Positions 15,161-45,114 are shown, numbered from the stretch's first letter. The stretch: 64,000 nucleotides of DNA from Leucoraja ocellata (GCA_036785375.1 JAWMAR010000471.1:434001-498000); one strand, 5' to 3'. Numbers and translations are program-made. Notes: a model not told the origin generated them from the sequence alone.

Positions 15161-16068
15161 CTATTTGACCCATTTCCTAATTTCTTTCAAGGGGGATTGA
15201 ATCGCATTTTTCAACTGCTCTCTGAATTTGGTCTGCGTCCCTGCATAAATGCAGGAGTTGGTGCAGGAACTGAGAAGCTCCAACATGTATCCGCTCTCCT
15301 GTAGAATAAACCTTGGGTCATTGGAATTGGAGCCGCTGGCATAGTTGTTGCTGGTAAATTGCACATATAGAAAATTGACAACATATGTCAACCGGAACAG
15401 GAGAAAGCTGCCCGAGATTGCCATGAGTAAAATGATGGACTTTCGCCTGCTCTCCATCTCTGGGTCCCTCTGTTTGGGACCAGTGCTCTGGGCCCTGAGC
15501 CTCCTGCGTACTCCACTGGCTGACAGAATGTGCCTGACCGTCAGAATATTGAGCAGGAAAATCGAAACGAAGGGGAAAAAGGGATTTATAATGCGGTCAA
15601 ACCAGTCAGAAACCCTCCATGCAATCGAAGTATAATATACATCTTTTATGGTGCAGTACCAGGGCACATCGTCAATGATGTAGGCTGGCTCGTATACAAA
15701 GTAGGTTGGGACGTTTTTCAAACAACCCACCACACAGATTGCGCACACGACGATATTCGCGATTCTCTCACGGCAATACCTAAGCTTCAGTCCCTGGCAA
15801 CAAATGGCGATGAAGCGATCGAATGTGAATGCGACCGTCAGCCAAGAGGACGTGTCCTTGGACGCCCAGCTCAGGACAATAACGAGACTGCAACCCGGAG
15901 TGACGGAGAGCAAGCTGACTGGAAAATATATCGCTCGAAGTCGGCTTAATATCACAGCGTTAATAATAACCAGGAAATCCGTCACTGCCATGAACACCAG
16001 GTAGCGTGTGATGCATTTGGAGAGACCACATCCTCCGATTGACAGGATGACTATCGTTACTAAGTTCG
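15161..16068 (-). CDS. GPR139/142-like class A GPCR G1, exon 2 (protein 325 aa)
   Basis: Acceptor TCTTACAG; ANLVTIVILS, MAVTD, TFDRF, TM5 NPFFP, NSCIY; open to TAG. Confidence 0.92.
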
Positions 16069-17912
16069 CTGTAAGAGAAAGGGAGATACTGGATCAGTCT
16101 GAATCAGGCTGCCCTCTACATCATCAGCGTATTGAGGAAACGGGAAAATGTATTTTCCCAATTAATCTTTACAATACAATACAATACAATATTCATTGTT
16201 ATTTGAACCGCAGTAGGCTTAAACGAAATTCTGTTTCTACAGCCATACAAACAAAAAAACGATTCCTACTCGACGCACAACCAATTCACACAAACATCCA
16301 TCACAGTGAACCTCTTCCTCACTGTGGTGGAAGGTAAAGTCTTTTCTTTCCCCAGTTCTCCATTTTTCTCCCGATGTTGAAGCCCGTTGTAATCTTAATG
16401 CTATTGGAATGCCTAAATGGATATCAATGTGCGCTTTGAGCTGATTATGCCAGTTGAACTCGCGAATGTTAAACAAAGGTCTTAATTGCCCGCTTCAAGG
16501 ATCCAAACTGGTAAAATACCCCAAGAATGACCCACCGAGTCCACGGGGAACATCGCTCTCCCGTTCACTCGAGTTCTGTCATCACACGGTCAAGGGGCAA
16601 TTTATCGTATGAAAGAATGAATAAGAACGAATTAGTTTATTAACCAAGTATTCACATACAAGGAATTTGCCTTGGTGCTCCGACCGCAAGTGACAACATA
16701 CAGTGGCCTAGGAATGACACATAAAACATTAAACATTAATATTAAAATGTATCGATTAAACATGTGAATTAAATAAAATACCAGAACAAAAGGAGGCTAC
16801 AGATTTTTGGTTATTGAGTCGTGGAAAAAAAATCTGTTTTTTTTATTTCTGGGTGTGGCAGCGTTGACAGTCCGGAGTCGCCTTCCAGAGGTAAGTGATT
16901 CAAAGAGTCTGTGTATATCTATACACTGTAATTTGCTCGATTGCAATCATATATTGTCTTACTGCTGACTGGGTGGCATAAAAAACACAAGCTTTTCACT
17001 ATACCTCGGCACACGTGACAGTAAACAAAGTTGTAAATTGCAAACTGTAAACTGTATAATACAACTGTATAAACTGTAAACTGTATAAACTGTATAACTG
17101 TATATGGATGAGAAGGGAATGGAGGGTTATAGTACGAGTGCAGGCAGGTGGGACTAAGGGGAAAAAAAATTGTTCGGCTTGGACTTGTAGGGCCGAGATG
17201 GCCTGTTTCCGTGCTGTAATTGTTATATGGTTATATGGTTATATGGTTATATGGAAGCAAAAGCATTCTGGTTTAAAAACTGCATCATATCAACCTGAAC
17301 ATTCCGTGTTGATGTTATATTCCCACATGCCTAATTATTCATCGTGGTAAATAATTTGTTACATACCCGTGCAAAAGTAACACCAGAAAATAAACATTTA
17401 GGTAGATTAGTATGTGGGACACCGCAGCAAACGTTTGTGGATGGATAACGAGAAGTTGCATCGGTCGGACAGGATGAGCATGTGTAATTAGCTTAATATC
17501 CTCAGTCGATAAATCAATTTTAAATGATAGCAACGAGGCACGTTTCAAATTTTAAGCAGATTACTATCAGTGATGTTCTCACTTGCCCAGAGAACGTCGA
17601 TATTCCAGTCAAAAGTGCAATCAAACGTAATTTTAAACAAAAGATGAGACAAGAAATATACGCGATTTCATTGCACAGGCCAATATTATAGAACACGTTA
17701 TTTTTGAATCAATATTAACAACCTCCCCTTGCAAGTAATTTGGTCAAATTAATATTTACTTTCAATCTCACAAACAGCGGAGATCTGGGGCCGTATTTTC
17801 TTTGCACCGTAAGAAAACTGAAATAAAATGACCACCAATTAGTAATAAGCAATTGCTGCGCGGCGTGACCGACAGAGTCACTGTCCGTTGTTAACAGGTA
17901 CTGGTGCCTTAC

Positions 17913-17982
17913 CTGGGACACCGAACGATGCAAGGAGAGAATAGTAAATTGCAAAGACCGGCCCATTTCCAGGAGCGTGCAT
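17913..17982 (-). CDS. GPCR G1 exon 1 (MHAPGNGPVFAIYYSLLASFGVP)
   Basis: 70-nt exon conserved in all 4 paralogues; donor GTAAGG; phase 1 matches exon 2. Confidence 0.9.
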
Positions 17983-19273
17983 TTTTCTTCTGAACGGTAG
18001 TCTAATGAGATGCAATGTCAGATATCGGCGCTTCCGCACATCTTTATTCACACGATTGTATTCCCTGAAGTGGCAATTAACCTGGATTACGACAAAGTGT
18101 TGATTGCAGTATTCTGAACGAAGAGATCAAACAGCCATGATAATGCGTTTTGAAATTAAGCAGATGTAATGCATTTAAAGTGAAAGCACAAATCAGATAC
18201 AATAGAAGTTTGTTACTGGTATTGGTTTCGATAAGCCCCTGTCCCACTTAGGAAACCTGAACGGAAACCTCTGGAGACGTTTCGCCCCACCCAAAGTTCC
18301 CGTGCGGTTTCCGGAGGATCCCGGAGGTTTTTGTCAGTCTCCCTACCTGTTTCCACTACCTGCAACCTCCGGCAACCACCTGCAACCTCCGGAAACCGCA
18401 CGGAAACCTTGGTACACTAGTTCTGTAATCCCATTTTAGCACCAACTCCTTGCACCGTATGGCCTCGCTTGGAAGATGAAGCATGGCAAAAGGCCCCTCG
18501 AATGACCCAGGGACTGCACGCCGGGCATCGTTCAACCGTTCACACCAGTTATGTAATGCCATTTTAGCACCCACTCTCTACACATTGGGGGCAATTCACA
18601 CATAAGAATTAACGTGCATCCAACACGGCTTTGGATTCGAAGTGACCAATGTAATATGTTTGGCCGACTCATCGTGCAACGTGAAATTTGCCTGACCACG
18701 GAGTCCTGACGTTAGTTAAACATTATGGAGGCTTCCTTTAAAATAAGATGGACCGTTGTGACATACCAACAAGATGTCAGGTAAAGGTTGAAGGACATGT
18801 GTACTATGACCGATGATTGGGTAATGACTGACAGGGACCACTGGAATATGAACTCAGGCTGGGCGCTGCATAATGGGGAATTATATAGTTTGAAGAAGAA
18901 ATTACATGAAAAACGGTATCGTCCCAAAACGTTGCCTATTTCCTTCGCTCCATAGATGCTGCCCCATCCGCTGAGTTTCTCCAGCATTTTTGTCTACCTT
19001 TGGTGTAATTTAAATGCAGGTGTCACGTGGTGTTGTCGTGGAATTGAAAAAAGGAATGGTGGGTGTTTCACTGGGAGCAGACTCATAGGAAAATAATCCA
19101 GGCCTTCCTTGTGTCTTTTACCAGTGTCTGTTCCTGATCTATTGCTGAAAGAGATGACAGGTTAAACTAAGCACTTCCGCCTGCACGTGTCCAAATCCCT
19201 GCATGTTCAGGTGCCTATCTAAAAGGCTCTTCAATGCCACTATTGTATCTGCCCCAGCGCTACCCTCAATTGT

Positions 19274-19500
19274 GGGACAACAGATGGCGCAATGGGCTAA
19301 GTGTTCGGCTGGCGACCGGAAGGTAGCCGGTTCGAATCCCGCTTGGAGTGCATACTGTCGTTGTGTCCTTGGGGCAAGACACTTCACCCACCTTTGCCTG
19401 TGTGTAAATGTAATGTAATTATGTGAAGCACTTTGGGGTCAATGCAAGTTGACTAAAAATGTGCTATATAAATAAGATTATTATTATTATTATTATATTA
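19274..19500 (+). mobile_element. tRNA-derived CORE-type SINE with L2-like tail
   Basis: A/B boxes (TGGCGCAATGG, GGTTCGAATCCC), core GTGTCCTTGGGGCAAGACACTTCACCC, tail like the L2 at ~15070-15125, (ATT)n end. Confidence 0.8.
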
Positions 19501-20109
19501 TTAACTGTGATCAGCCATGATCACTATGAATGGCCGTGCTGGTCAAAGGGCCAAATAGCTTCTTTCTGCGCATATATTCTATGTTCCCCTGTTTCTATGT
19601 GCGTTCCAGGGCCCTACCACTCCGTGTAAAAAATAAAATAAAAATCCACCGATTCACTTTTAACCGGAATGTTCAGCAAGTGTAATGCAAACATTTTCTG
19701 TTTGGTATTGCAGCAGTCAGAGAGATATGAATCGTGCTTTCGGCAATCACAGCGTATCCCTCAATTAATGTGGACTTATTCTAGACATGCAATTTTAGTA
19801 ACGGCTGTGATATAGGCAGAGATCCAGCCTGGTGCTATGGCTGGTGTTGCAATATCAGAAGAGATGTACAGCGTACAGGATACAGTTTGGTTTGAAGTAG
19901 AGGTCTGAAGTAGTGCTCGTTTTAAGTGCCTTCAATATGATCAATTCATTGAAGCAAGAATGCTGGAGAAACTCACCGGGTAAGGCAGCATCTGTGGAGC
20001 GAAGCAATAGACGACGTTTCTGGTCGAGACCCTTCTTCAGAAAGGTCTTCTTCAGGAGAAGGGTTTATTCTTCAGAAGAAGGGTCTCGACCCGACCCGCT
20101 GCCTCGCCA

Positions 20110-20775
20110 GATAGAAGCAAATGGCATGTTAGCATTCATAGCAAAAGGATTTGAGTATACGAGCAGGGAGGTTCTACTGCAGTTGTCCAGGTCTTGGTGA
20201 GACCACACCTGGAGTATTGCGCACAGTTTTGTTCTCCTAATCTGAGGAAAGATATTCTTGCCATAGAGAGAGTACAGTGAAGGTTCACCCGACTGATTCC
20301 TGGGATGGCAGGACTTTCATATGAAGAAAGGCTGGATAGACTCGGCTTGTACACGCTAGAATTCAGAAGGTTGAGGAGGGATCTTATAGAAACTTATAAA
20401 ATTCTTAAGGGGTTGGACAGGTTAGATGCAGGATGATTATTCCCGATGTTGGGGAAGTCCAGAACTAGGGGCCACAGTTTAAGGATAAGAGGGACGTATT
20501 TTAGGACCGAGATGAGAATATCATTTTTTTACACAGAGAGTGGTGAATCTGTGGAATTCTCTGGCACAGAAGGTAGTTGAGGCCAGTTCATTGGCTATAT
20601 TTAAGAGATAGTTAGATGTGGCCCTTGTGTCTAAAGGGATCAGGGGGTATGGAGAGAAGGCAGGGATGGGATACTGAGTCGGATGATTAGCCACGATCAT
20701 ATCGAATGGCGTTGCAGGCTCGAAGGGCCGAATGGCCTACTCCTGCACCTATTTTCTATGTTTCTATGTTTCTAT
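20110..20775 (+). mobile_element. CR1/HER1-like LINE 3' fragment
   Basis: [14 protein letters not shown]..; TTTCTATG tail. Confidence 0.88.
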
Positions 20776-21012
20776 GAGATTCTCCAGCATTTTTGTCTGC
20801 CTTCGATTTTTCCAGCATCTGCAGTTCTTTCTTAAACAATTCGTTGAAGCATGTAAGTTTGTGAGCTAATTTGTTTTTCTCCGAGAAATGCAACTAACAA
20901 TGTTAATGGTTTGAGCTATTTTTAGATTCAATGGCGTGATCTAATATAAGGAGATGTACTGCAGTATTAATTTCACAATCGACATTTTACCAGGACGTCG
21001 TCCTAACGGATT

Positions 21013-21082
21013 ATGCACGCGCCTGGGAATGGACCTGTCTTCGCTATTTATTATTCTGCCCTTGCTGCTTTCGGCGTTCCAG
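21013..21082 (+). CDS. GPCR G2 exon 1 (MHAPGNGPVFAIYYSALAAFGVP)
   Basis: Conserved 70-nt exon, donor GTGAAG. Confidence 0.9.
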
Positions 21083-21229
21083 GTGAAGAGTGAAAATAGA
21101 CTAAACGTGGACAAAACACGTATAACCGTTCGTTGCTGAGTATTTTGATTGTTCAATATATTTTTTCATGATTTCTTTTCAGCTACCTACAGAGTGTTTC
21201 GACGACGAAGTGTATTCCTTCGATTGTTA

Positions 21230-21533
21230 GGGCCTGTTCCACACTACAAGGTAATTCAAGAGTTCTCCCGAGATTCACCTGATTCGAACTCGGAGAATTA
21301 TGGTAACAGCCACTCGTAGGTATTCGGGGCTCTCGTGGACATTTTTCAACATGTTAAAAAATCTTCACATGTCTTCACGGGTTACCGCGTTCCCCGAGTA
21401 CCTGCCGTTAGCGTTACGAGCTGCTAAGAGACGTCCCGACCTCAGACGTACCCGCTACGTACATTCTACGTACTTACAACGAGTTTGATTTTTTAAAGAG
21501 CTCTTGAATTACCTCGTTGAGTGGGACAGGCCC
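21230..21533. mobile_element. MITE with terminal inverted repeats (possibly PIF/Harbinger-type) in G2 intron
   Basis: GGGCCTGTTCCACACT ... AGTGGGACAGGCCC; subterminal GGTAATTCAAGAG/CTCTTGAATTACC. Confidence 0.65.
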
Positions 21534-21859
21534 TTTACTATTTTAGGTCCCAATGTTAACTTCATTATATATTACTTGACCAGTTTCTGAAGGCTGATTT
21601 AAAAATATTCTCTGATGCACGCAGTTTGGTGCAAGGCACGCACTTTTCGTTCAACGTCGCGTCACATTCAAACGTTTTTACGTCTAATGTTTATTTTTAA
21701 ATTACTTTTATCCTGTATATTTTCTTTGGCGACACAAGGGGCTGTAAATACTGGAATCTTGCAGCAAAACATAAAGTACCGGAGTGATTTAGCTAGGCGG
21801 CAGCATCTGTGGAGGTAATGAATGGGCAACGTATCTGAACCCTTGTATCGACCATGAGA

Positions 21860-22300
21860 CCTGGGATGTCAGCACTTTCATATGAAGAAAGACTGGATAG
21901 ACTCGGCTTGTAGTCGCTAGAACTTAGAAGGTTGAGGGAGGATCTTATAGAAACTTACAAAATTCTAACGGGGTTAGACAAGCTAGATGCAGGAAGATTG
22001 TTCCTGATGTTGGGAAGTCCAGAACAAGGGGTCACAGTTGAAGGATAAGGGGGAATCTTTTAGGACCGAGATGAGAACAACATTTTTTACACAGAGAGTG
22101 GTGAATCTGTGGAATTCTCTGTTGAAGCGAGTTAATTGGCTATATTTAAGATGAAGTTAGATGTGGCCCTTGTGGCTAAAGGTTTCAGGGGGTATGGAGA
22201 GAAGGCAGGTACAGGATACTGAGTTGGATGATCAGCCATGATCATATTGAATGGCGGTGCAGGCTCGAAGGGCCGAGTGGCCTACTCCTGCACATATTTT
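21860..22300 (+). mobile_element. CR1/HER1-like 3' fragment in G2 intron
   Basis: Similar to other copies. Confidence 0.85.
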
Positions 22301-23769
22301 ATAATTTTCTACGTTAAGAGACTTCTCTCAGTAAGCTTCGTGGGGTGGGGTTAGGGATGCGATAAGCAGAACAAGGGCACAGAGGACACATGGGTGAGTG
22401 ATCCACCCGCGACAGCATGGGGAGCTACGTTTACTGAATAAAGGACATTCTGGATAATCTGAAGTGAAATGCTTCGGCGTGGAAGCAGATGCGGCGGTAT
22501 TCGAGAGCAAGGGATGACATTCTTGCAAGTTGCAGGACAGCAGGAAGGTCTGAAGATGGGCCCCGACCCAAAATGTCGCCGATACGTTCTCCCTTACTCA
22601 CCAAAGATTATTGCCCGACCCGCTGTGTTACTCCAGCACTTTTTGTTTTCTAGTGTATTTCTTTCATTTTGTACTTTGATTAAAATATGATAACTATCAC
22701 AGATATTGTGACTGTCTAATGTAAACCATAAATGCGGCATCGTATTGATACATTTCGTATCCAGAGCAGATTGGAATTCTATTTCACCAAGCTCTCCGAC
22801 TTGTTGGTCATCACAACTTTTTTTGAATTGTAGTTCTTATTGTAATCAATAAATTTTCAGGCGCTTTATTGTCACGAGCCCAGTACCTATCTTATGCATA
22901 GCGACGTAATTACACGAACTGAACTCTGAAATCGGTGCCTTAATGCAGAAAGTCATGATCTTTATTTCGGCCATGAATCCTATCCGTATACCAAATGGTT
23001 TTGTAGTGGTTTGTTAACTCGCTTTAGTAACGATATTAACCCACCCCTCCCCCCTTGGGAACTTCTACTGGCAAAGGATGTCGTGTTTGAAATTGGAAGT
23101 TGAGAGGCTGCAATTTTCCACTCAGAAACTGTCTGGAATTGTAAAGTATGATAACATTGAACTATTGTGAACGGGTGGTTGGCGTGATTGGTGGGATGAA
23201 CGGGCTCTTTCCACGTTGTAGCTCTGATATATACTGGACGACGAAACATGAGATAGAAAATGTCTTGAAACATTTGCCAACGTTCATGTTTGCGAGACCT
23301 CTTGGGCCACCGCCACGCCCTTCATCGAAGGAGTCGTTACGATGAAGCTCTGTCAGATTTATCCGCGACACCCCATCACTGGTGGTAGTTTCTTACAAGA
23401 AAAAAAATCTATCTTCATTATGTGTTTCCATGTAAACTGGTTACATTCCATGGACTGTCTGCTGATGTATTAAATTATTCTTACACGATATGCGAAAATG
23501 GGCCTCGTATCACACGCATGAAGAGAATTGGTTGATTATACGCGCGAAATTGGAATTATTTTTATGTCGTTTGTGTGCAGCTCAAGTCAATGGGCGAATT
23601 TAAGACGGAAGTCGACACAATCCGGAATAGTAAGTGTGTCAAGGGTTATGGGGAGAAGGCAGGTGAATGAGTTTGAGCAGTAAAGATAGATCAGCCACGA
23701 TTCAATGGTCGAATAGACAGGATCTGACAGCAATATTAGAATTCGTTGCATTTTCTAGCGGCGAAGCTA

Positions 23770-24237
23770 ATTATTAATTAGCTTACAGAGAAAGATTGAA
23801 CAAGTTAGGTCCTTATTCTCTGGAGCGCAGGAGGCTAAGGGGGACTTGATAGAGGTATTTAACATGATGAGAAGGATAGACAGAGTTGACGTGGATAAGC
23901 TTTTCCCATTGAGAGTAGGGGAGATTCAAACAAGAGGACATGTTTGAGAAATAAGGGATAGAAGTTTAGGGGTAACATGAGGGGGAACTTCTTTACTCGG
24001 AGCGTGGTAGCTGTGAGGAATGAGCTTCCAGTGGAAGTGGTGGAGGCAGTTTCGATTTTATCATTTACAAATAAATTGGATAGGTATATGGACGGGAAAG
24101 GAATGGAGGGTTATGGTCTGAGTGCAGGTAGATGGGACTAGGGCAAAATAAGTGTTCTGCACGGACTAGAAGGGCCGAGATGGCCTGTTTCCGTGCTGTA
24201 ATTGTTATATGTTATACGTTATATGTTATATGTTATA
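23770..24237 (+). mobile_element. CR1 3' fragment ending just before the G2 acceptor
   Basis: Same subfamily as 1670-2300; (TTATATG)n tail. Confidence 0.85.
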
Positions 24238-24269
24238 TTAATATCCCGGTCTCTCCCTCTGTTCTGCAG

Positions 24270-25177
24270 CGAATTTGGTGACGATTGTGATTCTATCCAA
24301 AGGAAGATGCGGCCTCTCCAAATGTATCACTCGCTACCTGGTATCCATGGCGGTGATGGACTTCCTGGTCATCATCACCGCGGTGATCTTAAGCCGGCTT
24401 CGGGCTATTTATTTCCCGAACACAGTCCTGTCTACCATTCCGACCTGCAAGGTCCTTATTGTCCTCAGCTGGATTTCAAAAGACGCTTCCGTCTGGTTGA
24501 CGGTCGCTTTCACGTTCGATCGGTTCATCGCCATTTGCTGTCAGAAACTGAAACTAATATATTGCACCGAGAAAATCGCGGCGGGTGTTATTGCAACGGT
24601 CTGCGCGTTAGGCTGTTTGAAGAACGCCCCATTTTATTTTATATATGAGCCAGTCTACATAATTGATAATATACCCTGGTTCTGCACCATAAAAGAATCA
24701 TACTACACTTCAATCGCATGGATAGTGTACGATTGTCTACACCGCGTTTTGAACCCATGTCTCCCGTTCCTACTAATTCTGTTGCTCAATGTTGCGACGG
24801 TCAGACACATTCTAGCTGCCAGTGCAGCCCGCAAGAGGCTCCGGGCCCAGACCAACGGTGGAAAACAAAGTGACCCGGAAATGGAGAGTCGGCGGAAGTC
24901 GATCATTCTACTCATGGCGATCTCGGGCAGTTTTATGCTGTTGCGATTGACCTACGTCGCAAACTTCCTCTTTGTGCAAATTACAAGCAGCGGTTATGCA
25001 ACCCGTTCCAATTCCAACGACCCCAGGTTTATTCTCCAAGAAGGTGGATACATGCTGGAGATACTAAGTTCTTGCACCAACTCGTGCATTTACGGGGGGA
25101 CACAGACTAAGTTTAGAGAGCAGCTGCAGGAAGTGGTTAAGTATCCGTTCTATCTAATTCGCAAGCGGTTCAAATAG
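24270..25177 (+). CDS. GPR139/142-like GPCR G2, exon 2 (protein 325 aa)
   Basis: Acceptor TTCTGCAG; 7TM, TFDRF, open to TAG. Confidence 0.92.
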
Positions 25178-25464
25178 ACTGAACACATTTTTCTCTACAA
25201 CAACAATGCGGATTGTCAGTGAAACGGAGCTTGAGAGCTGTATTCTATTTTCCGTCCTTACTGTTAATGTGAGCTGCTGATGTATGCTATGTAACTCGCC
25301 CTCGCGGGCACACCAATGCAAGTTTACATCTCCGGGTCTAAACATCTGAAATAAAAGTATATACAATTCGAAGTTTCTTTCCTGTTCATGCTGTTACGAG
25401 GGTATTCAGATGCCAAGTTAAAGTCATATCATCTCTCTCCGTGTGATTCATATCCCTACTTTCC

Positions 25465-26000
25465 TAGAAACATAGAAACATAGAAAATAGGTGCAGGAGT
25501 ATGCTATTCGGTAGTTCGAGCCTACACCACCATTCAATATGATCATGGCTGATCATCCGACTCAGTATCCCGTACCTGCCTTCTCCCCACATCCCCTGAT
25601 CCCTCTAGCCACAAGGGCCACATCTAACTCCTTCTTAAATATAGCCGATAAACTACCTTCTGTGGCAGAGAGTTCCAGAGATTCACCACTCTCTGTGTGA
25701 AAAATGTTTTTCTCATCTCGGTTCTAAAGGATTTCCCCTCTATCCTTAAGCTGTGACCCCTTGTCCTGGACTTCCCCAACATCGGGAACAATCTTTCTGC
25801 ATATAGCCTGTCCAATCCCTTAAGAATTTTGTAACTTTCTGTAAGATCCCCCCTCAATCTCCTAAATTCTAGCGAGTACAAGCCGAGTCTATCCAGTCTT
25901 TCTTCATAAGAAAGTCCTGTTATCCCAGGAATCAGTCTGGCGAACCTTCTCTGCACTCCCTCTATGGCAATAATGTCCTTCCTCAGATTTGGAGACCATA
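25465..26000 (-). mobile_element. CR1/HER1-like 3' fragment
   Basis: QRRFARLIPG..FFTQRVVNLWNSLP. Confidence 0.88.
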
Positions 26001-30358: not shown

Positions 30359-31263
30359 TTACTTGATTTTCTTAATCAGGTTGAAGGGGTATGTGACCGC
30401 ATTTTTCAACTGCTCTCTGAATTTGGTCTGTGTCCCCGCATAAATGCACGAGTTGGTGCAGGAACTGAGAAGCTCTAGCATATATCCGCTTTCTTGAAGA
30501 ATAAACCTCGGGTCAGTGGAATTGGAACTGCTGGCATAGTTGTTGCTCGAAAACTGCACAAACAGGAAGTTGACAACGAACGTCAGGCGCAGCAACAGGA
30601 AACTACCCGAGATGGCGAAGAGTAAAATGATGGACTTCCTCCTGCTCTCCATCTCTGGATCTCTCTGGTTGTCTCCATTGCTCTGGGCCCGGAGCCTCTT
30701 ACGGGCTCCACTGGCCGCCAAGATGTGTCTCACTGTCAGGGCGTTAAGTAACAAAATCAGAAGGAAAGGGAAACATGGGTTTAATATACGATGCAGCCAG
30801 TCATAAACTCGCCAGGAAGTTGAAGTATAATAGACTTCTTTTATGCTGCAATACCAGGGCACCTTATCGATAATATACACGGGCTCATAAACAAAGTAGA
30901 GCGGTATGTTTTTGAAACAGACAAGGGCGCAGATTACTCCAATAACTGCAGCCGCCGTTTTCTCCGTACAATAACCGTGTTTCAGTCGCTGGCAGCAAAT
31001 GGCGATGAACCGATCGAAGGTGAACGCGACAGTTAGCCAGACGGAAGTGTCTTTGCAAGCCCAGCTGACTGCAATGACGACACTGCAGGCGGGATTTGTT
31101 GCCAAGAAACTAAGCGGGAAATAAATTGGCCGCAGCCGGGTCAATATCACGGCTGCGAGAATGACCAGGAGATCCGTCACCGCCATGAACACCAGGTAGC
31201 GAGTGATGCATTTGGAAAGGCCGCATCTTCCCTGGGAGAGAATCACGATCGTCACCATATTGG
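30359..31263 (-). CDS. GPR139/142-like GPCR G3, exon 2 (protein 324 aa)
   Basis: Acceptor TTTCACAG; 7TM, TFDRF, open to TAA. Confidence 0.92.
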
Positions 31264-33020: not shown

Positions 33021-33090
33021 CTGGCAAGCCAAACGCCGCAAGAGTAGTGTAGTAAACGGCAAAGATTGGTGCATTTCCAGGCGCGTGCAT
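33021..33090 (-). CDS. GPCR G3 exon 1 (MHAPGNAPIFAVYYTTLAAFGLP)
   Basis: Conserved 70-nt exon, donor GTAAAT. Confidence 0.9.
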
Positions 33091-33623: not shown

Positions 33624-33651
33624 GACGTTTCGGGCCGAAACCCTTCTTCAG
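33624..33651 (-). ncRNA. Minimal hammerhead-ribozyme-like core in Penelope-derived repeat
   Basis: CTGAAGA-AGGGT-TTCG-GCCC-GAAACGTC. Confidence 0.55.
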
Positions 33652-37138: not shown

Positions 37139-37265
37139 GTAAGGATTTTCACCCAGTAAAAATCCTGTCTTCCCACGAATGCTATCGCCTGATTTCTGCC
37201 GATGTAAAGATAATGCTGATGCCGGTTCAATCATGGTGATTCTGACAATTTCTCTTTTCTCTTAG

Positions 37266-37569
37266 ACTGGAGCCATCAAAATGCGGTGGAACAGACCGAA
37301 GCAGAAACCGCGTTTGCAGAGGGAACGGATGTAACACTCAAGTGCCTGCTGAAAACCAGCGATTCCCTCCCATTTGTTTACTGGTACAAGCAGTGCCTTG
37401 GACATTCTCCGCAGTACCTGATTCAGGTTATAGGATATAACGTATACAGGGCGAAGGGCATCACAGATCGATACTCTGCTACATTCAATACAACTACAAA
37501 GACGGGCGAGTTCGTGATACGTGACGGCGTGTTCTCCGATTCCGCCCTGTACATATGTGCTATGCGATA
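37266..37569 (+). CDS. TCR alpha/delta V exon V3
   Basis: Acceptor CTCTTAG; VEQ..TLKC..VYWYKQ..DSALYICAMR. Confidence 0.93.
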
Positions 37570-37608
37570 CACACTGGTGCAAATGTGCCGCGGGCTCGAA
37601 CAAAATCC
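37570..37608 (+). other. 23-RSS of V3
   Basis: CACACTG + 23 nt + ACAAAATCC. Confidence 0.9.
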
Positions 37609-37959: not shown

Positions 37960-38270
37960 AGAACAAGGGGTCATAGTTTAAGGATAAGGGGGAAATCTTT
38001 TAGGACCGAGATGAGGAAAACATTTTTCACACAGAGAGTGGTGAATCTCTGGAATACTCTGCCGCAGAAGGTAGTTGAGGCCAGTTCATTGGCTATATTT
38101 AAGAGGGAGTTAGATGTGGCCCTTGTGGCTAAAGGGATCAGGGGGTATGGAGAGAAGGCAGGAACAAGATACTGAGTTGGATGATCAGCCATGATCATAT
38201 TGAATGGCGGTGCAGGCTCGAAGGGCCGAATGGCCTACTCCTGCACCTATTTTCTATGATTCTATGTTTC
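37960..38270 (+). mobile_element. CR1/HER1-like 3' end
   Basis: RTRGHSLRIRGK..FFTQRVVNLW. Confidence 0.88.
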
Positions 38271-39029: not shown

Positions 39030-39800
39030 CGCGTGCATGCGCAGCGGTTGAGTTGCTGCTATACACCCGGGTTCTATCCTGGCTATGTACAAGCTGTTGC
39101 ACGACGTTTGTACGTTCTCCGTGACCTGCGTGTGTTTTCTCTGGGAGCTATAGTTTCCTCCCACACCCTAAAGATGTATAGATTTGTAGGTTAATTGCTT
39201 TGGCATGATTGTAAAATTGTCCCTAATATGTGTGGATATCTGCCCCCTGCTGGATCGAAGGGCCTGTATCTCCAAGTTAAAGTATCTCTAAACGCTGTAT
39301 CTCTAAACTAAACTACACTAAACTAAACTAAACTAAATTAAACTAAACATATAACCATATAACCATATAACAATTACAGCACGGAAACAGGCCATCTCGG
39401 CCCTACAAGTCCGTGCCGAACAACTTTTGTTTCCCTTAGTCCTACCTGCCTGCACTCATACCATAACCCTCCATTCCCTTCTCATCCATATGCCTATCCA
39501 ATTTATTTTTAAATGATACCAATGAACCTGCCTCCACCACTTCCACTGCAAGCTCATTCCACACCGCTACCACTCTCTGAGTAAAGAAGTCCCCCCTCAT
39601 ATTACCCCTAAACTTCTGTCCCTTAATTCTGAAGTCATGTCCTCTTGTTTGAATCTTCCCTATTCTCAAAGGGAAAAGCTTGTCCACATCAACTCTGTCT
39701 ATCCCTCTCATCATTTTAAAGACCTCTATCAAGTCCTCCCTTAACCTTCTGCGCTCCAGAGAATAAAGACCTATTATTCAACCTATCTCTGTAACTCTGT
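39030..39800. mobile_element. V-SINE (HE1-like, +, ~39030-39345) tail-to-tail with a CR1 3' fragment (-, ~39345-39800)
   Basis: (AAACT)n tail abutting (AACCATAT)n; CR1 ORF 39442-39732. Confidence 0.75.
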
Positions 39801-40275
39801 AACATGGTTCTCCCTCGATCATAGGAACTGACGCTGTCTGTCGGCGCATTCGAGAGTATCAGTATGAGATCATGATCACGGACAAATCAAATCGATGAAA
39901 TTACCGATTATAAATTCGGTATGGTAACGAATTTCAGATGTCTTTTCTCGGAAATCCCCATTGAAACGACTTACATCGGGTCATTTCCTTCAGCTGTGTG
40001 CGGATGAAAGGCAAGTGTGGATTATAAGGCATGCTCGCCCTCAGTTGGCCCGCCCTGGGCATTTCGCTACACCCATCTCCGCCCTGCAACCGCACGTTCC
40101 GCCTCTCACACAGTATCCAATCGATGTCATCTTATGATGGCCCCGCCCATCTCTCGCCTTTGGTTCTGTCGCTCTGTGAACATGTCGTGCCTTTGTCTTT
40201 GGGAGCCAGCTGCAGCCGGTCACTGGTTGGTCTTGGTTGATTTTACAGAGTGTTGGTTTGGACAGAGTGTTTCAA

Positions 40276-40351
40276 ATGATGAGCAGCTACAGATTTATAC
40301 CTATTATTGTCGGACACCTCCTCCCGCTGTTCATTGCCATGTCACTTCTCA
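40276..40351 (+). CDS. Leader exon of V4 (MMSSYRFIPIIVGHLLPLFIAMSLL)
   Basis: ATG..CTC A|GTAAGA; phase 1. Confidence 0.85.
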
Positions 40352-40486
40352 GTAAGATATTTCTTGCCCGTAAAAAATGCTATCTTGCAATGAATGTCGT
40401 AACCTAATTGTTGACAGTGGAAGGTTAATACCTATGCTGCTTCACGCAAAGACGCTAATTGTGCCATTGTCACTATTTTCTCTTAG

Positions 40487-40790
40487 ATTCGACACATCAA
40501 AATACAGTGGAACAATCCGAAGCAGAAATTACGTTCGAAGAGGGAAGGAATGTCACACTAAGCTGTGCTCTGAAAACCAGTGATACAACGCCTTATGTTT
40601 ACTGGTACAAACAGCGCCCAGCTCACTCTCCACACTACCTGCTTCAGGTTCTGGGAAATATTGTATTAAGGAACCAGGGCGTGACCGATCGCTTCTCTGC
40701 TACGTTCAATAAAACTGCGACGATGACCGAGTTCATGATACGCGACCCCGTGATGTCTGATTCCGCCCTGTACATCTGCGCCATGAGACG
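40487..40790 (+). CDS. TCR alpha/delta V exon V4 (paralogue of V3)
   Basis: Acceptor CTCTTAG; VEQSE..TLSC..VYWYKQ..DSALYICAMR. Confidence 0.94.
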
Positions 40791-40829
40791 CACACTGTTG
40801 CAGAAATGCTGCAGGCTCGAACAAAAACC
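40791..40829 (+). other. 23-RSS of V4
   Basis: CACACTG + 23 nt + ACAAAAACC. Confidence 0.95.
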
Positions 40830-40974
40830 CACCCTCTGTGATCCCCATGAGCGTTCGCCAGCGAGCGCTCTTAAACAAAACGGAGACATTTTGGAGAAAT
40901 AGGAAGGAAAATTGGTTATTTCCTACTAGCCAGTTACAATTCTTCTTAGTAGTTACTCCGCGTATTGTGTACTT

Positions 40975-41236
40975 TCGGTGTCAAAATTGCAACTATTTCC
41001 ATTCTACGGGTCGTCAGTTCTGTGTTGCATATGACAACGCCTGCAAATTCTGCAAGAAGTTAAACCACTTTGCTCGGTGCTGCCGTTCCCGTGTGAATCC
41101 AGCAGCTTCAAGGACGAGCCTGCACCTGCTACAACATTGTTGATAATGACTTCCAAGAACACCACATCGCACCACGCCCAGATCGAAAAAGAATTGTTCG
41201 CAGTGGTTTTCGCCTGCACGAAATTCGATGACTTTA
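40975..41236 (+). mobile_element. Internally deleted Gypsy LTR-retrotransposon remnant
   Basis: Gag zinc knuckle CKFCKKLNHFARCC followed shortly by RNase H-like AQIEKELFAVVFACTKF. Confidence 0.65.
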
Positions 41237-41665
41237 GGTGATTAGTGGGGAAAATGAGGGCACATGGTATTGGGGGTAGAGTGTTGACATAGATAGAGAT
41301 TTGGTCGGCAGACAGGTAACACAAAGTAGGGATTAACGGGTCCCTTTCAAAATGGCAGGCAGTGACTAGTGGGATAGCGCAAGGCTCGGTGCTGGGACCG
41401 CAACTATTTCCAACATACATCAATGATTTGGATGAATGGATTCAAAGTAGCATTAGCAAGTTTGCAGATGACAAGATCGCTGGGTGGCAGTGAGAACTGT
41501 GAGGAGGATGCTATGAGAATGCAGGGTGACTTGGACAGGTTGGGGGAGTGGGCAGATGCATGGCAGATGCGGATAAAGGTGAGGTTATCCACCTTGGCAC
41601 CAAAAACAGGAAGGCAGATTACTATCTAAATGGCGTCAAGTTGGGCAAAGGGGAAGTACAACCAG
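41237..41665 (+). mobile_element. CR1 RT internal fragment
   Basis: QGSVLGP, KFADD, QGDLDRLGEWADAWQM. Confidence 0.8.
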
Positions 41666-42586
41666 ATGTGTTATTAACAGTCCACCTATATTGCTTAGCC
41701 ACTGGTGTTTCTTTTGTTTCTAAAGGAAAGATGTAGATTGGTTATTTCTTACTAGCCATTTATAGTGCTTGTTAGTAGCGACTCCGCCTAGTATGTGCTT
41801 GATATTATCAAGTGCTTGCCTATGCTAGTTGGTATGAGTAATTCCTTGGAACTGTAATGTCCTACAGACCCATGCTGTAAGTAGATGTAATAAACATGTG
41901 TGATATCTTGATATGTGTTCGACTCGGCTCATTATAGACAGGGTACTTATTCGCTTGGAATAAAGTGTGCCAAAAAGCAGGAAGACTGGGATTGTTTTCA
42001 ATATGTGAATTCGTGCGAACGCTGTTGTTCCCAATGTTCAACATCTTGATATTCCGATGTGGAACTATACCTTGTACGACTCGGAAATGATTTGCATTGA
42101 CATGGACTCCGTTGCTGATCTATGTAAATATCTCTACAGTCTCCCACGGACTCTTGTATATTTCGAAACCCGCCTGCATGAAGAGTGGAAGTAAGTACGA
42201 CAGTAAGCAGGGAGATCGTGAGATGGATAATGTATTTTCATCAACACATTGTGCCAGGAATAAAGTTGAAGGACAAGACCAATCGCGATCTCAGGACGGC
42301 AGCAAACGCACTTCATTAGAGTTCTATCTCAATTACACGGCTGACGGCTTCTGCTGACGTCAGCAAGACAATCCAGAAAATAACATCATCAACGGGACCG
42401 CTGGGCACCACGGGGGGTAGAATGTATCCTCAATAAGGATGGGGAAATGGCTATTTAATATTTAGGAATATGTGTTTACTTTGTATTATAGTGGTGGGTT
42501 TATTTGTATTTTTGTATGTGTTTTTGTAAATAGATGATTAAAATTATTTTTGGTTAATAAATAAAGAGACGTCGTTCGCGGGCAAA

Positions 42587-42717
42587 NNNNNNNNNNNNNN
42601 NNNNNNNNNNNNNNNNNNNNNNNNNNNNNNNNNNNNNNNNNNNNNNNNNNNNNNNNNNNNNNNNNNNNNNNNNNNNNNNNNNNNNNNNNNNNNNNNNNNN
42701 NNNNNNNNNNNNNNNNN
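42587..42717. other. Assembly gap
   Basis: Run of N. Confidence 1.
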
Positions 42718-43033
42718 TATACTTTGAAATGTTTCAGAAACTCGTTGCGTCAAAGCCAAATAAAGGTGTTGAGTAAATGCTCCTCTGACCAACAACGCTC
42801 ATATTTGTCAAAACGTAGAAAGTCGAGTTGACGGAATTTTATTTTGCAATTTCCTTCCGCTAAGATATACACTTTTATCTGTTTCCACAAAGTTTCAACA
42901 ATTGCTTCCAATAATGTGACAATAATACTACAAACCCTGAAGCGCAATTGACCCGACCATTTTTAATTGTAATGTAGACTGAAAATATCCTTCCCTTTAT
43001 GAACCCTTCGTACAATTGTATTTGTCTTGACTA

Positions 43034-43941
43034 TTATTTGAACAGTTGTCTAATTATGTTGAAAGGGTATTGGATAGTTGTCTTCAGCTGTTGTCTGAAT
43101 TTAGTCTGAGTCCCCGCATAGATAAATGTGTTGGCGCAGGAACTGAGAAACTGCAACATATATCCGCCTTCTTGAAATATGAACTTCGGGTCATTGGAAT
43201 TAGAGGCGCTGACATAGTTATTCGCTGTGATTTGCACAAATAGAAAATTTGCAACGTCCGTGGCCCAGAGCAGAATAAAACAGCCCGAGATGGCGAAGAG
43301 CAAAATGATGGACTTTCTCCTGCTCTGCATCTCTGGGTCCCTCTGTTTCTCTCCGTTGTTCTGGGCCCGAAGTCTACCGCGAGCTCTGTTGGCGGCCAGG
43401 ATATATCTGACCGTCAGCACATTGAGCATCAAAATCAGTAAGAAAGGAACGCATGGGTTTAACATCCGGTGCGACCATTCATACACTCTCCAAGCGACGG
43501 AAGTATAAAATATTTCTTTTATGCTGCAGAACCAGGGCACTGTATCGATAATGTACATCGGTTCAAATTCAAAATAAAACGGGACGTTTCTCAAACAGGC
43601 GAGGAAGCAAACGGTTCCAATAACAACGGCCGCGGTTTTCTCGGTGCAATACCTCAGTTTCAGTTGTTGGCAGCAGATCGCCACACACCGATCGAAGGTG
43701 AAAGCCACCGTTAACCAAACGGAAGCATCTTTAGCTGCGGAGCTGAGCGCAATGATCAGACTGCAACCCGGCGTGGTGGATAAGATACTAACTGGAAAAT
43801 AAATCGCCCGAAGGCGGCTGAATATCACAGCCGTGACGATGACCAGGAAATCTGTCACCGCCATGAATACCAGGTACCGAGTGATGCATTTCGAGAGGCC
43901 GCACTTTCCCTGGGACAGAATGGCAATCGTCAGGACGTTAG
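43034..43941 (-). CDS. GPR139/142-like GPCR G4, exon 2 (protein 325 aa)
   Basis: Acceptor TTCCTTGCAG; 7TM, TFDRC, FILLW, NTFIY; the ORF-track N-terminus (43942-44038) is intron. Confidence 0.92.
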
Positions 43942-44244
43942 CTGCAAGGAAAAGAGTGGGATTATGTAAATAATATCTATCGGTGATCTCTTCATGACTG
44001 GCTTTTGGGAGCAGACGTGCAATCCCATATCGTTGCAACGAATGCAGAGCGTGAAGCGGTTATTGGTTTGATGGTTACTTGTTTCTGATATCAAATGGCC
44101 ACGCGAAACCGAGCTCTACGGCCTATCGCGTGCACTACGATGGACATAATTGCACAGTCTTATGAATTTCACTGCCTGGTATAATTTACGTGGTATGTAT
44201 ATTTGTGCGTGTTGCCTGTCATGCTGTTGCAAGCACGATTTTTA

Positions 44245-44585
44245 TGGTAACCATATAAACCATATAACAATTACAGCACGGAAACAGGCCATCTCGGCCC
44301 TACAAGTCCGTGCCGAACAACTTATTTTCCCTTAGTCCCACCTGCCTGTACACATACCATAACCCTCCATTCCCTTCTCATCCATATGCCTATCCAATTT
44401 ATTTTTAAATGATACCAATGAACCTGCCTCCACCACTTCCACTGGAAGCTCATTCCACACCGCTACCACTCTCTGAGTAAAGAAGTTCCCCCTCATATTA
44501 TCCCTAAACTTCTGTCCCTTAATGCTGAAGTCATGTCCTCTCGTTTGAATCTTCCCTATTCTCAAAGGGAAAAGCTTGTCCACAT
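44245..44585 (-). mobile_element. CR1 3' fragment in G4 intron
   Basis: VDKLFPLRIGKIQTRGH..; (AACCATAT)n tail. Confidence 0.88.
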
Positions 44586-45044
44586 ATGCTTGGTACATGT
44601 GCCTCGTCACACTTGACTTGTCTATCTTCAAACAGGACAAGGTTAATTAATAACCGAAATGACTCACAGATTAACATGGACAGGACAATTTTAAGCAAGG
44701 CAGGGTAGACATATTGGAACAGGATATGTGGAGTTTTATGGACGAATCTGAAAGCGCCAGTAAAGTATATTTGCAACAAAACTAAGACATAAGGGGAACT
44801 TCGAATCAACTATGAAAATAGGTTATGCCATAAAATAAATTATTGTAATAATGTAAAGACTGGATATAATAAGTAACGCCCTTACCAAAGCTTCCCCGTG
44901 TAAAATTCGAAGTTTTAAGAGCAACGATAAGGGACAAATTGTGGAAAATTGTGGTGTAGAACCGAAGAGTAAGGCGGCCGGAGCGGAACATATCAGCTCA
45001 TCATGGACACGGTTACGTATTTATCAACTTTGGCGAAGCTTTAC

Positions 45045-45114
45045 CTGGAACACCGACGACTGCAAGGATTGTGTAATAAGTGGCGAAGATTGGCCCATTT
45101 CCAGGCGCGTGCAT
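45045..45114 (-). CDS. GPCR G4 exon 1 (MHAPGNGPIFATYYTILAVVGVP)
   Basis: Conserved 70-nt exon, donor GTAAAG. Confidence 0.9.

What the first reader, a model, noticed from the sequence alone, without database searches (positions are those of the whole stretch)
15161..45114. Cluster of four intact GPR139-like orphan GPCRs interleaved with rearranging TCR V segments
Seen: the order is V1+ V2- tRNA G1- G2+ G3- V3+ V4+ G4- V5- V6- V7-. All four GPCRs have a 70-nt exon 1 (MHAPGN..YY..LA..G.P), canonical splice sites and an open exon 2, despite dense repeat insertion around them, which suggests purifying selection. Known: the TM1 signature YYxLLxxGxP-AN matches GPR139/GPR142 (aromatic amino-acid receptors, single-copy in mammals); olfactory receptor genes are interspersed with the distal TRAV genes in mammals. 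Inference: this is an expanded, diversifying receptor family (chemosensory or immune-sensing) co-duplicating with TCR V genes, occupying a position like that of ORs in the mammalian locus.
Basis: partly seen in the sequence, partly recalled or inferred. Interest (0 to 1): 0.88.

Follow-up and report, generated by a model that had tools for sequence, protein, structure and literature searches.

The report
Orphan receptor genes among TCR segments
Four intact genes of a large shark-and-ray family of orphan cell-surface receptors lie between T-cell-receptor gene segments in a skate genome; whether that neighbourhood means anything is untested.

Summary
The gap at 42587-42717 lies 317 bp 3' of the G4 stop and touches no exon.

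The genes belong to a family that databases auto-name 'probable GPR139'. Human GPR139 is its nearest solved relative, but distant (23% identity). The family is a separate lineage, greatly expanded in elasmobranchs: 51 of the best 120 hits come from one shark and lie on four chromosomes. Its sister is a salamander gene, and the next relative is a conserved single-copy vertebrate gene.

G1-G4 are old duplicates that arose within rays and skates (dS 1.1-1.3) and are under purifying selection (dN/dS 0.11-0.16). I found no shared V+GPCR duplication block in this window.

Expression was not shown: four RNA runs, probably from a related species, gave no reads on the exons.

First-stage notes of this scan report the same interleaving in many other windows of this genome; those notes are unchecked. 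I found no paper describing it.

The parts
17913..17982 (-). G1 exon 1 (70 nt, MHAPGNGPVFAIYYSLLASFGVP + 1 nt), donor GTAAGG
15161..16068 (-). G1 exon 2 (908 nt including stop), acceptor ..CTTACAG; 7tm_1
21013..21082 (+). G2 exon 1 (70 nt), donor GTGAAG
24270..25177 (+). G2 exon 2 (908 nt including stop); 7tm_1
33021..33090 (-). G3 exon 1 (70 nt), donor GTAAAT
30359..31263 (-). G3 exon 2 (905 nt including stop); 98% identical to Amblyraja radiata P0001
45045..45114 (-). G4 exon 1 (70 nt), donor GTAAAG
43034..43941 (-). G4 exon 2 (908 nt including stop); keeps Trp at the TM6 toggle position
2520..2860 (+). V1: V-set exon (second Cys ends at 2807) and RSS 2822-2860 (CACAGTG-23-ACAAAAACC)
6250..6590 (-). 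V2: V-set exon (Cys ends at 6300) and RSS 6288-6250 (weak heptamer CACGGCG-23-ACAAAAATA)
37286..37608 (+). V3: V-set exon (Cys ends at 37558) and RSS 37570-37608 (CACACTG-23-ACAAAATCC)
40489..40829 (+). V4: V-set exon (Cys ends at 40779) and RSS 40791-40829 (CACACTG-23-ACAAAAACC); 65% identical to V3
49976..50324 (-). V5: V-set exon and RSS 50014-49976 (CACAGTG-23-ACAATAACT)
56617..56972 (-). V6: V-set exon and RSS 56655-56617 (CACAATG-23-ACAATAACT); 48% identical to V5
61421..61779 (-). V7: V-set exon and RSS 61459-61421 (CACACTG-23-ACAAAAACT); 52% identical to V4
42587..42717 (.). Assembly gap (131 N) between V4 and G4, 317 bp 3' of the G4 stop codon; no exon affected; continuity across it unknown
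   Evidence: ARAGORN; Rfam RF00005, 71.3 bits

Best explanation
G1-G4 are functional genes of a GPR139-related but separate lineage of class A orphan GPCRs. This lineage was amplified to many dozens of copies per genome in sharks and rays. Each gene has a short first exon that encodes the N-terminus and the outer half of TM1, a phase-1 intron, and one large exon for the rest.

The four copies belong to one subclade that duplicated within the ray/skate lineage long ago, and they have been kept by purifying selection. The intracellular face is conserved and the outer, ligand-facing half varies. That is the pattern of a receptor family that shares one signalling output and differs in ligands (inferred).

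They lie inside a translocon-type array of TCR alpha/delta-like V segments. My reading of that position is genomic neighbourhood: both families grow by local duplication in the same duplication-prone region, as OR genes do among the distal TRAV genes of mammals. I do not read it as a functional coupling. This last step is inference, not shown.
For: Gene structure and intactness:
- Structure and open frames.
- NCBI models of the orthologues in two other skates use the same exon 1 / exon 2 junction: P0001; P0006 and P0010.
- Purifying selection and age: dN/dS 0.11-0.16 and dS 1.14-1.32 in 6 of 6 pairs. Homology is confined to exon 2.

Family size:
- 2183 hits at E <= 1e-3. The best 120 are all elasmobranch or unnamed.
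- 108 representatives at 50% identity score E <= 1e-30.

Tree:
- G1-G4 fall in a clade of 8 rows that holds only the four window genes and proteins of two skates (100/95).
- Two shark genes are its sister (100/93).
- The whole expansion plus the salamander genes forms one clade (98/91), sister to a single-copy vertebrate clade (100/100).

Relation to GPR139.

Structure and variability:
- The 7TM model of orthologue P0001 has pLDDT 88.2 and pTM 0.85.
- Mean column entropy is 1.18 in the outer half (163 positions) and 0.70 in the inner half (138 positions), Mann-Whitney p 1e-8.

V segments:
- 7 of 7 are V-set with a 23-spacer RSS.
- Among the chains with a single V domain listed among the best hits, TCR alpha chains predominate; TCR delta appears only in fusion constructs.

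No cassette in this window: G1-G3 are adjacent without a V between them, and the V families (V3/V4/V7; V5/V6; V1; V2) do not mirror the G tree.
Against: - No expression was shown. Four RNA runs gave depth 0-0.36 over G1 exon 2 and 0 over G1 exon 1. The runs are from 'organism A', which holds only about 6% of the sampled words. Only 5-6% of each run was read, and the tissue is unknown.
- First-stage notes of this scan (unchecked) report the same interleaving in at least 8 further windows of the same contig, out to about 0.8 Mb, and on other pieces. Some describe 1:1 cassettes with NAR-TCR units. If true, that is more regular than passive neighbourhood predicts.
- All members of the G1-G4 subclade from chromosome-level assemblies lie on one chromosome per species. 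That fits a locus-bound cluster.
- The order V4 / G4 rests on scaffolding across a gap.
Confidence: 0.6

Rival explanations
1. The family is the main, so far overlooked, chemosensory (olfactory or solitary-chemosensory-cell) repertoire of elasmobranchs, which have very few OR genes. The TCR neighbourhood is incidental. This sharpens the function left open in the best explanation.
For: - Large, tandemly arrayed family.
- Conserved intracellular face and variable outer half.
- Compact gene structure with a TATA-like motif just upstream of exon 1.
Against: - The same paper reports that the 50 most abundant and most specific genes of the 'brain & olfactory epithelium' library include no GPCR. This is weak evidence, because single chemoreceptors are lowly expressed.
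- No expression data were obtained here.
- The paralogues have low dN/dS.
Confidence: 0.2
2. The subclade is functionally tied to the TCR locus. Either the receptors are immune-sensing receptors expressed in T-lineage cells through the chromatin and enhancers of the V array, or V-GPCR cassettes are selected as units.
For: - Unchecked scan notes report repeated interleaving, and 1:1 cassettes with NAR-TCR units, over about 0.8 Mb and on other pieces. One note reports an MHC class I-like gene inside a GPCR cluster.
- The subclade lies on one chromosome per species.
Against: - This window shows no cassette.
- The family lies on many chromosomes: at least 6 contigs in Heterodontus and at least 5 in Stegostoma.
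- 0 of 10 fused long models, and 0 of the 120 best hits, carry a V-set domain on record.
- The orientation of the G genes relative to the V segments is mixed.
- There are no expression data.
Confidence: 0.1
3. The interleaving is an assembly artefact: collapsed or mis-joined haplotigs, or repeats, in a region that is hard to assemble.
For: - There are three N gaps in the window.
- The little skate orthologues of G1 and G4 lie on different unplaced scaffolds.
- The region is dense in repeats.
Against: - G1-G3 together with V3 and V4 (15161-40829) lie in gap-free sequence. G4 to V7 (43034-61779) is gap-free too. So GPCR and V genes are joined without a gap on both sides of the one gap in the interval.
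- The same pattern is noted in many windows (unchecked).
Confidence: 0.05
4. The four genes are decaying relics that happen still to be open.
For: - No RNA support was obtained.
- G1-G3 lack the TM6 toggle Trp, and the family mostly lacks the TM6 and TM7 prolines.
Against: - dN/dS is 0.11-0.16 with dS above 1.
- 4 of 4 genes keep the ATG, the 70-nt exon, both splice sites and the frame.
- The orthologues in other skates are 98-99% identical.
- D-R of the DRY motif and the Y of NxxxY are invariant in 108 of 108 family sequences.
- The Arg that replaces the Trp comes with a compensating acidic residue.
Confidence: 0.03

Closest known systems
Human GPR139 (PDB 7VUG, 9M42); GPR142 by name only
   Same: - It is the nearest solved receptor for G3, for the family profile (E 1.3e-22 against 4.7e-16 for the next hit) and by Foldseek (rank 1).
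- It shares the TM1 signature YY..L...G.PAN..T..IL, the motif D-R-Y/F followed by IA.C, and a TM7 N-x-x-x-Y without proline (alignment).
   Different: - Identity is only 23%, and G3 alone scores 31 bits.
- The skate genes belong to a separate lineage with dozens of copies per genome.
- Most members lack the TM6 proline that GPR139 keeps (LWAP; P in 14 of 108 family rows).
- The ligand is unknown.
- No true GPR139 or GPR142 sequence could be put in the tree, because none was returned by a tool as a usable id.
Conserved single-copy 'probable GPR139' gene of non-mammalian vertebrates (Latimeria P0240 and relatives). It may correspond to one of the 'GPR210' orphans proposed next to GPR139/GPR142 in PMC6504862; that mapping is not verified.
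   Same: It is the sister clade of the skate family plus the salamander genes (100/99 for the union). It is also closest to GPR139 among solved structures (70 bits).
   Different: - It is single-copy in coelacanth, sharks, ray-finned fishes, amphibians and reptiles.
- It is about 34% identical to G3.
- Sharks have it in addition to the expanded family (P0315, P0318, P0322).
Olfactory receptor genes interspersed among the distal TRAV genes of mammals
   Same: Class A GPCR genes sit between rearranging TRAV segments. Examples are OR10G2 and OR4E2 in human, three Olfr genes in mouse, and the conserved arrangement in sheep (passages of PMC4574546).
   Different: - Mammals have two or three genes at the 5' edge of the locus. 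Here there are four genes in 30 kb, and, by unchecked notes, many more over about 0.8 Mb.
- The GPCR family is different.
- Homology of the arrangement was not tested.
Trypsinogen (PRSS) genes next to or within the TRB locus
   Same: An unrelated multigene family shares a TCR locus. PRSS is named as a flank of the axolotl TRB locus in PMC12529555. That trypsinogen genes are embedded within the mammalian TRB locus is recalled, not checked.
   Different: The locus and the gene family are different. This is an analogy for passive co-residence only.
Lineage-specific chemoreceptor expansions (TAAR in teleosts, V2R in sharks)
   Same: A large, tandemly arrayed GPCR family confined to one vertebrate lineage (passages of PMC11979771, for the known families).
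   Different: Expression of this family in sensory cells has not been shown. It is not listed among the four olfactory receptor families treated in that paper.

Membership tests
Class A (rhodopsin-like) GPCR | Match to Pfam 7tm_1 above the curated cut-off | tested here: met
   4 of 4 exon-2 products score 44.8-62.1 bits against a cut-off of 30.5.
Class A (rhodopsin-like) GPCR | Seven transmembrane helices plus helix 8 | tested here: met
   The AlphaFold2 model of orthologue P0001 (98% identical to G3) has pLDDT 88.2 and pTM 0.85. Its helices are 23-49, 57-87, 96-129, 140-164, 188-233, 242-277, 291-317 and 319-339.
Class A (rhodopsin-like) GPCR | Conserved micro-switches (D/E-R-Y, CWxP, NPxxY) | tested here: inconclusive
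   Counts are over 108 family rows.
- D-R is invariant (108 of 108), and the third residue is F in 85.
- The TM6 Trp is present in 79, and the TM6 Pro in only 14.
- In TM7, N is present in 107 and Y in 108, but Pro in only 21.
GPR139/GPR142 group | GPR139 is the closest characterised receptor | tested here: met
   GPR139 is the top hit and rank 1. The margin is about six orders of magnitude with the profile, but small by structure.
GPR139/GPR142 group | Shared sequence signatures (TM1 YY..L...G.PAN; TM7 N-x-x-x-Y without Pro) | tested here: met
   Residue-by-residue alignment of the family profile to human GPR139.
GPR139/GPR142 group | Orthology: falls inside the GPR139 or GPR142 clade in a tree | tested here: inconclusive
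   The family forms its own clade with the salamander genes, sister to another non-mammalian clade. No true GPR139 or GPR142 sequence was available as an id for the tree. The low scores (31 bits) argue against orthology.
GPR139/GPR142 group | Activation by aromatic amino acids or peptides | not testable with these tools
   This needs a cell-based assay.
TCR alpha/delta V gene segment | V-set Ig domain with the two canonical Cys and the WY.Q motif | tested here: met
   7 of 7 match Pfam V-set at 32-55 bits against a cut-off of 26.
TCR alpha/delta V gene segment | Recombination signal sequence with a 23-bp spacer just 3' of the V exon | tested here: met
   7 of 7 have a heptamer beginning CAC, an exact 23-nt spacer and an A-rich nonamer. 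The V2 heptamer is weak (CACGGCG).
TCR alpha/delta V gene segment | Closest to TCR alpha/delta rather than Ig or TCR beta/gamma V domains | tested here: inconclusive
   - Among the chains with a single V domain listed among the best PDB hits, TCR alpha chains predominate; TCR delta appears only in fusion constructs. Antibody scFv constructs with two V domains score as high or higher.
- One named database hit is 'T-cell receptor alpha/delta variable' of a cyprinid, at E 2.5e-4.
- A translocon layout with seven V exons and no J or C in 64 kb fits a TCR locus in a cartilaginous fish. That point rests on general knowledge.
TCR alpha/delta V gene segment | Leader exon, and J and C segments in the same locus | tested here: inconclusive
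   A heuristic leader search gave ambiguous candidates, some of them inside repeats. No J or C segment was looked for or seen in the window.
Chemosensory receptor repertoire | Expression in sensory neurons, ideally one receptor per cell | not tested
   The only RNA test was blank and of low power.

The most novel reading that the evidence does not exclude
In rays and skates the TCR alpha/delta V array and this GPCR subclade form one co-amplified unit. The receptors use the regulated chromatin of the V array for cell-type-specific, or even one-gene-per-cell, expression. That would make a second diversified receptor repertoire, immune or chemosensory, housed inside an antigen-receptor locus. The Arg-Glu pair that replaces the Trp toggle in G1-G3 would mark a change of activation mechanism in this locus-bound subclade.
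Probability: 0.08. Interest if true: 0.9.

Novelty: new variant of a known kind. Interest (0 to 1): 0.6.

Why it matters
Sharks and rays have very few classical odorant receptor genes. Here is a class A GPCR family of many dozens of genes per genome that exists only as automatic 'probable GPR139' annotations. I found no paper on it in the library searched.

If these receptors are expressed, they are a candidate for a missing sensory or signalling repertoire. The family also gives the orphan GPR139 branch a natural series of diversified relatives for ligand work.

Their position among rearranging TCR V segments extends, in an early-branching vertebrate and on a much larger scale, the old observation of OR genes among mammalian TRAV genes. 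It allows a direct test of whether genes embedded in V arrays are bystanders or are co-regulated with them.

Tried and rejected
As a substitute I scanned 10 over-long gene models for fused neighbour domains. I also used the contig lengths listed.

Expression. The one run search returned no RNA holder of the stretch. The one read-laying run, with four RNA runs of 'organism A' at 90% likeness on 15101-21100, covered only interspersed repeats.

V naming by database. Only 12 candidates were found, and only one is named as TCR alpha/delta variable. P0304 is a germline read-through ORF, not a transcript.

Logan proteins P0020 and P0045 as possible spliced transcripts. Both start inside or upstream of exon 2 in genomic fashion, so they say nothing about splicing.

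Leader exons of the V segments. The heuristic search was ambiguous, so I make no claim.

Site-wise dN/dS. This was not possible, because only protein sequences of the homologues were available and dS among the four window copies is saturated.

Distance between residues 265 and 303 in the model.

Salamander linkage. The TCR locus papers of Pleurodeles and Ambystoma do not mention GPR139 (passages found). The chromosome of the salamander gene could not be matched to the TRA locus.

Literature. Searches found no description of a GPR139-like expansion in cartilaginous fishes or of GPCR genes inside an elasmobranch TCR locus. The same was true of term searches inside PMC10322711, PMC11979771 and PMC10115646. 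Subscription journals are not covered. Supplements were closed; supplementary dataset S8 of PMC11979771 (tissue expression in catshark) may bear on expression.

Rejected readings. Pseudogenes are rejected on selection and intact structure. True GPR139/GPR142 orthologues are rejected on the tree and the scores.

Full report
OBSERVATION

The ORF listing gave four GPCR-like frames at 15161-15997(-), 24275-25177(+), 30359-31258(-) and 43034-44038(-). All four match Pfam 7tm_1.

Reading the junctions gives, in 4 of 4 genes:
- an exon 1 of 70 nt beginning with ATG and ending before GT;
- an intron of 1103-3187 nt ending in a pyrimidine tract and AG;
- an exon 2 of 905-908 nt;
- a summed length of 324-325 codons.

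Exon 1 is conserved where its surroundings are not. 44 of its 70 positions are invariant among the four copies, against 36 of the 300 nt upstream. tblastn finds no further copies or fragments of either gene kind.

Searches and trees used exon 2 alone. For full-length work I used the public orthologue P0001.

THE GAP

The window has three N runs: 6838-7057, 8902-9225 and 42587-42717. The last one lies inside the finding.
- It sits between the V4 RSS (ends 40829) and the G4 stop codon (43034-43036), 317 bp 3' of that stop. No exon or frame crosses it.
- What rests on it is only the order V4 / G4.
- GPCR and V genes are joined in gap-free sequence on both sides: G1-G3 with V3 and V4 (15161-40829), and G4 with V5-V7 (43034-61779).

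V SEGMENTS

There are seven V-set exons, and 7 of 7 match Pfam V-set. Each is followed, 7-14 nt after the second Cys codon, by a CAC-heptamer, exactly 23 nt and an A-rich nonamer. The V2 heptamer is weak.

Against solved structures, TCR alpha chains predominate among the single-V chains listed among the best hits; TCR delta appears only in fusion constructs. Two-domain antibody constructs score as high or higher.

One named database relative is a cyprinid 'T-cell receptor alpha/delta variable'.

The V exons fall into old families: V3/V4/V7 (65% and 52% identity), V5/V6 (48%), and V1 and V2 alone. Leader exons could not be assigned with confidence. 'TCR alpha/delta-type V segments' is therefore well supported but not proven by a J or C segment.

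WHAT THE GPCR GENES ARE

Family size. G3 exon 2 finds 2183 proteins at E <= 1e-3. The best 120 are all from sharks, rays and skates, or are unnamed. Nearly all are auto-named 'probable G-protein coupled receptor 139'. Fifty-one of the 120 are from the horn shark, on four chromosomes (32, 9, 9 and 1). Later look-ups add two more horn-shark contigs and several chromosomes in other species. In the library clustered at 50% identity, 108 representatives score E <= 1e-30. After that there is a sharp drop to proteins of 24-30% identity.

Orthologues. G3 is 98% identical to a thorny-skate protein. G1 and G4 are 98-99% identical to little-skate proteins. The NCBI models of these proteins use the same exon junction. 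The source is thus a rajid skate near both species.

The careful tree:
- G1-G4 fall in a clade of 8 rows holding only the window genes and proteins of two skates (100/95). In the wider quick tree, sawfish, devil-ray and stingray proteins join the matching batoid-only clade (18 rows, SH-aLRT 96).
- Two shark genes are its sister (100/93).
- The core family has 100/99 support.
- The whole expansion plus a salamander gene (Pleurodeles, Ambystoma, Lissotriton) forms one clade (98/91).
- Its sister is a single-copy gene present in coelacanth, sharks, ray-finned fishes, amphibians and reptiles (100/100).

The lineage is therefore old, and it expanded in elasmobranchs. G1-G4 arose within rays and skates after the split from sharks.

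RELATION TO GPR139

Human GPR139 is the best solved match for:
- G3, at 31 bits;
- the salamander gene, at 53 bits;
- the coelacanth gene, at 70 bits;
- the family profile, at 83 bits and E 1.3e-22, against 4.7e-16 for neurotensin receptor 1.

It is also rank 1 by Foldseek at 23% identity, although many peptide receptors follow closely.

'GPR139-like' is therefore fair as a description. Orthology to GPR139 or GPR142 is not supported.

A 2019 survey proposed extra orphans ('GPR210A/B') next to GPR139/GPR142 in coelacanth, gar and fishes, and did not include cartilaginous fishes (passages of PMC6504862). I could not map its identifiers to my clades.

SELECTION, STRUCTURE, VARIATION

The six pairwise comparisons of exon 2 give 68-76% amino-acid identity, dN 0.15-0.20, dS 1.14-1.32 and dN/dS 0.11-0.16. 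Nucleotide similarity among the copies stops within about 20 nt of the exon-2 borders. These are old duplicates under purifying selection.

The model of P0001 is a confident 7TM fold with a beta-hairpin in ECL2.

Across 97 core family members, mean column entropy is 1.18 in the outer halves and extracellular loops and 0.70 in the inner halves and intracellular loops (p 1e-8). The most variable parts are ECL3, the top of TM3, the N-terminus and helix 8. The least variable are ICL1, the inner part of TM3 and inner TM2. This fits one signalling output with varied ligands, but it is the common pattern of GPCR families and is not evidence of positive selection.

Most of the family lacks the TM6 and TM7 prolines.

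G1-G3 and their closest relatives carry Arg at the TM6 toggle position, where 79 of 108 rows have Trp.
- In 8 of 9 rows with Arg or Lys there, TM7 position 303 is Glu or Asp.
- All 8 acidic rows have Arg or Lys.
- 89 rows pair Trp or Tyr with Gln.
- This agrees with another first-stage note on this window. Because the rows are one clade, it may be a single event.

THE LINK WITH TCR GENES

What is shown: in this window four family members and seven V segments alternate in blocks (V V | G G G | V V | G | V V V), in mixed orientation.

What argues against a cassette here:
- There is no homology outside the coding exons.
- G1-G3 are adjacent with no V between them.
- The G tree ((G1, G2, G3), G4) does not mirror the V families.

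What argues against a family-wide tie to antigen-receptor loci:
- Members lie on many chromosomes.
- Of 10 over-long database models, four carry domains of unrelated neighbours: hemopexin, a voltage-gated sodium channel, integrin alpha and uromodulin-like D8C. None carries a V-set domain.
- None of the 120 best hits has a V-set domain on record. This is a weak test, since V segments are rarely fused into gene models.

What argues for a locus-bound subclade:
- In the quick tree, every member of the 23-row clade around G1-G4 that comes from a chromosome-level assembly lies on one chromosome per species: 59.5 Mb in horn shark, 59.9 Mb in thorny skate and 57.8 Mb in sawfish.
- First-stage notes of this scan, which I could not check, report the same interleaving at about +125, +184, +199, +308, +435, +561, +619 and +812 kb on this contig and on other pieces. 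Some describe 1:1 cassettes with NAR-TCR units. Other arrays are noted without any TCR mention.

EXPRESSION

No RNA run holds the stretch 15161-25160.

Four raw-read RNA runs of 'organism A' were laid on 15101-21100 at 90% likeness.
- Depth was 0-0.36 over the body of G1 exon 2 (15301-16100). It was 0 over the bin with G1 exon 1, and at most 0.16 over the bin with G2 exon 1.
- The first bin (15101-15300), which holds the 3' end of G1 exon 2 and its flank, had depth 7-42, about equal in both directions.
- Thousands of reads of 90-95% likeness piled on interspersed repeats, in both directions and with loose ends.
- Organism A holds only about 6% of the sampled words. The best DNA holders are another organism.
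- Only 5-6% of each run was read, and the tissues are unknown.

This blank has little weight either way.

LITERATURE

Six searches found nothing on this family or on GPCR genes inside an elasmobranch TCR locus. Neither did term searches in the catshark sensory-genome paper, the little skate genome paper and a TCR alpha evolution paper (passages only).

OR genes among the distal TRAV genes of human, mouse and sheep are documented (passages of PMC4574546).

Supplements were closed. The catshark tissue-expression tables may hold relevant data.

READING

Shown:
- The genes are intact, selected, two-exon and GPR139-related, and they belong to an elasmobranch-expanded lineage.
- They are interleaved with RSS-bearing V segments of TCR alpha/delta type.

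Inferred:
- They are working receptors with varied ligands.
- Their position reflects shared residence in a duplication-prone array rather than shared function.

Open:
- The tissue of expression and the ligands.
- Whether the linkage holds across the locus and across species.

I rate the finding as a new variant of a known kind. The known kind is GPCR genes interspersed in a TCR V array, and a lineage-specific GPCR expansion. The interest is real but, on present evidence, moderate.

Noticed in passing
G1-G3 exon 2 (15161-16068, 24270-25177, 30359-31263) versus G4 (43034-43941): G1-G3 have Arg at the TM6 toggle-Trp position together with Glu in TM7; G4 keeps Trp with Gln. In 108 family proteins a basic residue at the first site goes with an acidic residue at the second in 8 of 9 rows, and all 8 acidic rows are basic at the first site. 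All but one of the basic rows are members of one ray/skate subclade, so this may be a single event.
   Followed up: partly
about 55-60 nt upstream of each exon-1 ATG (near 18040, 20955, 33148, 45172): All four genes have a TATA-like ATAAA(T/G)A motif there, with TAATTG / CAATTAAC-like motifs further upstream (alignment A2). There are only four sequences, and the motifs were not tested against chance.
   Followed up: no
window 19277-19351: The ARAGORN 'tRNA-Ala(GGC)' is not confirmed by Rfam at the gathering score. It lies in sequence covered by many RNA reads of 90-95% likeness, so it is probably a tRNA-derived repeat. The tRNA-Thr at 8260-8331 is confirmed.
   Followed up: partly
window 6838-7057 and 8902-9225: There are two further assembly gaps outside the finding. 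The first is 248 bp upstream of the V2 exon, so a V2 leader exon cannot be placed.
   Followed up: no
window 20115-20776, 25462-25998, 48777-49438, 52190-52834 and at least six more places: An interspersed repeat of about 650 bp is present in many copies at 70-97% identity. RNA runs of a related species cover it heavily in both directions. One copy lies just upstream of G2 exon 1.
   Followed up: no
database proteins P0006 and P0010 (little skate): The orthologues of G1 and G4 lie on different unplaced scaffolds of 208,695 and 169,644 bp in the little skate assembly, although G1 and G4 are 27 kb apart here. The region seems hard to assemble in that species too.
   Followed up: no
database proteins P0318 and P0416: Two models of the conserved single-copy relative are named 'transmembrane protein 183A isoform' in a shark and a frog. 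This suggests the gene sits next to TMEM183A across vertebrates.
   Followed up: no
database protein P0183: This family representative (47% identical to G3) is known only from UniRef, with no organism shown. If it is from a chimaera, the family predates the elasmobranch-holocephalan split. No named chimaera member was seen among the 30 representatives looked up.
   Followed up: no
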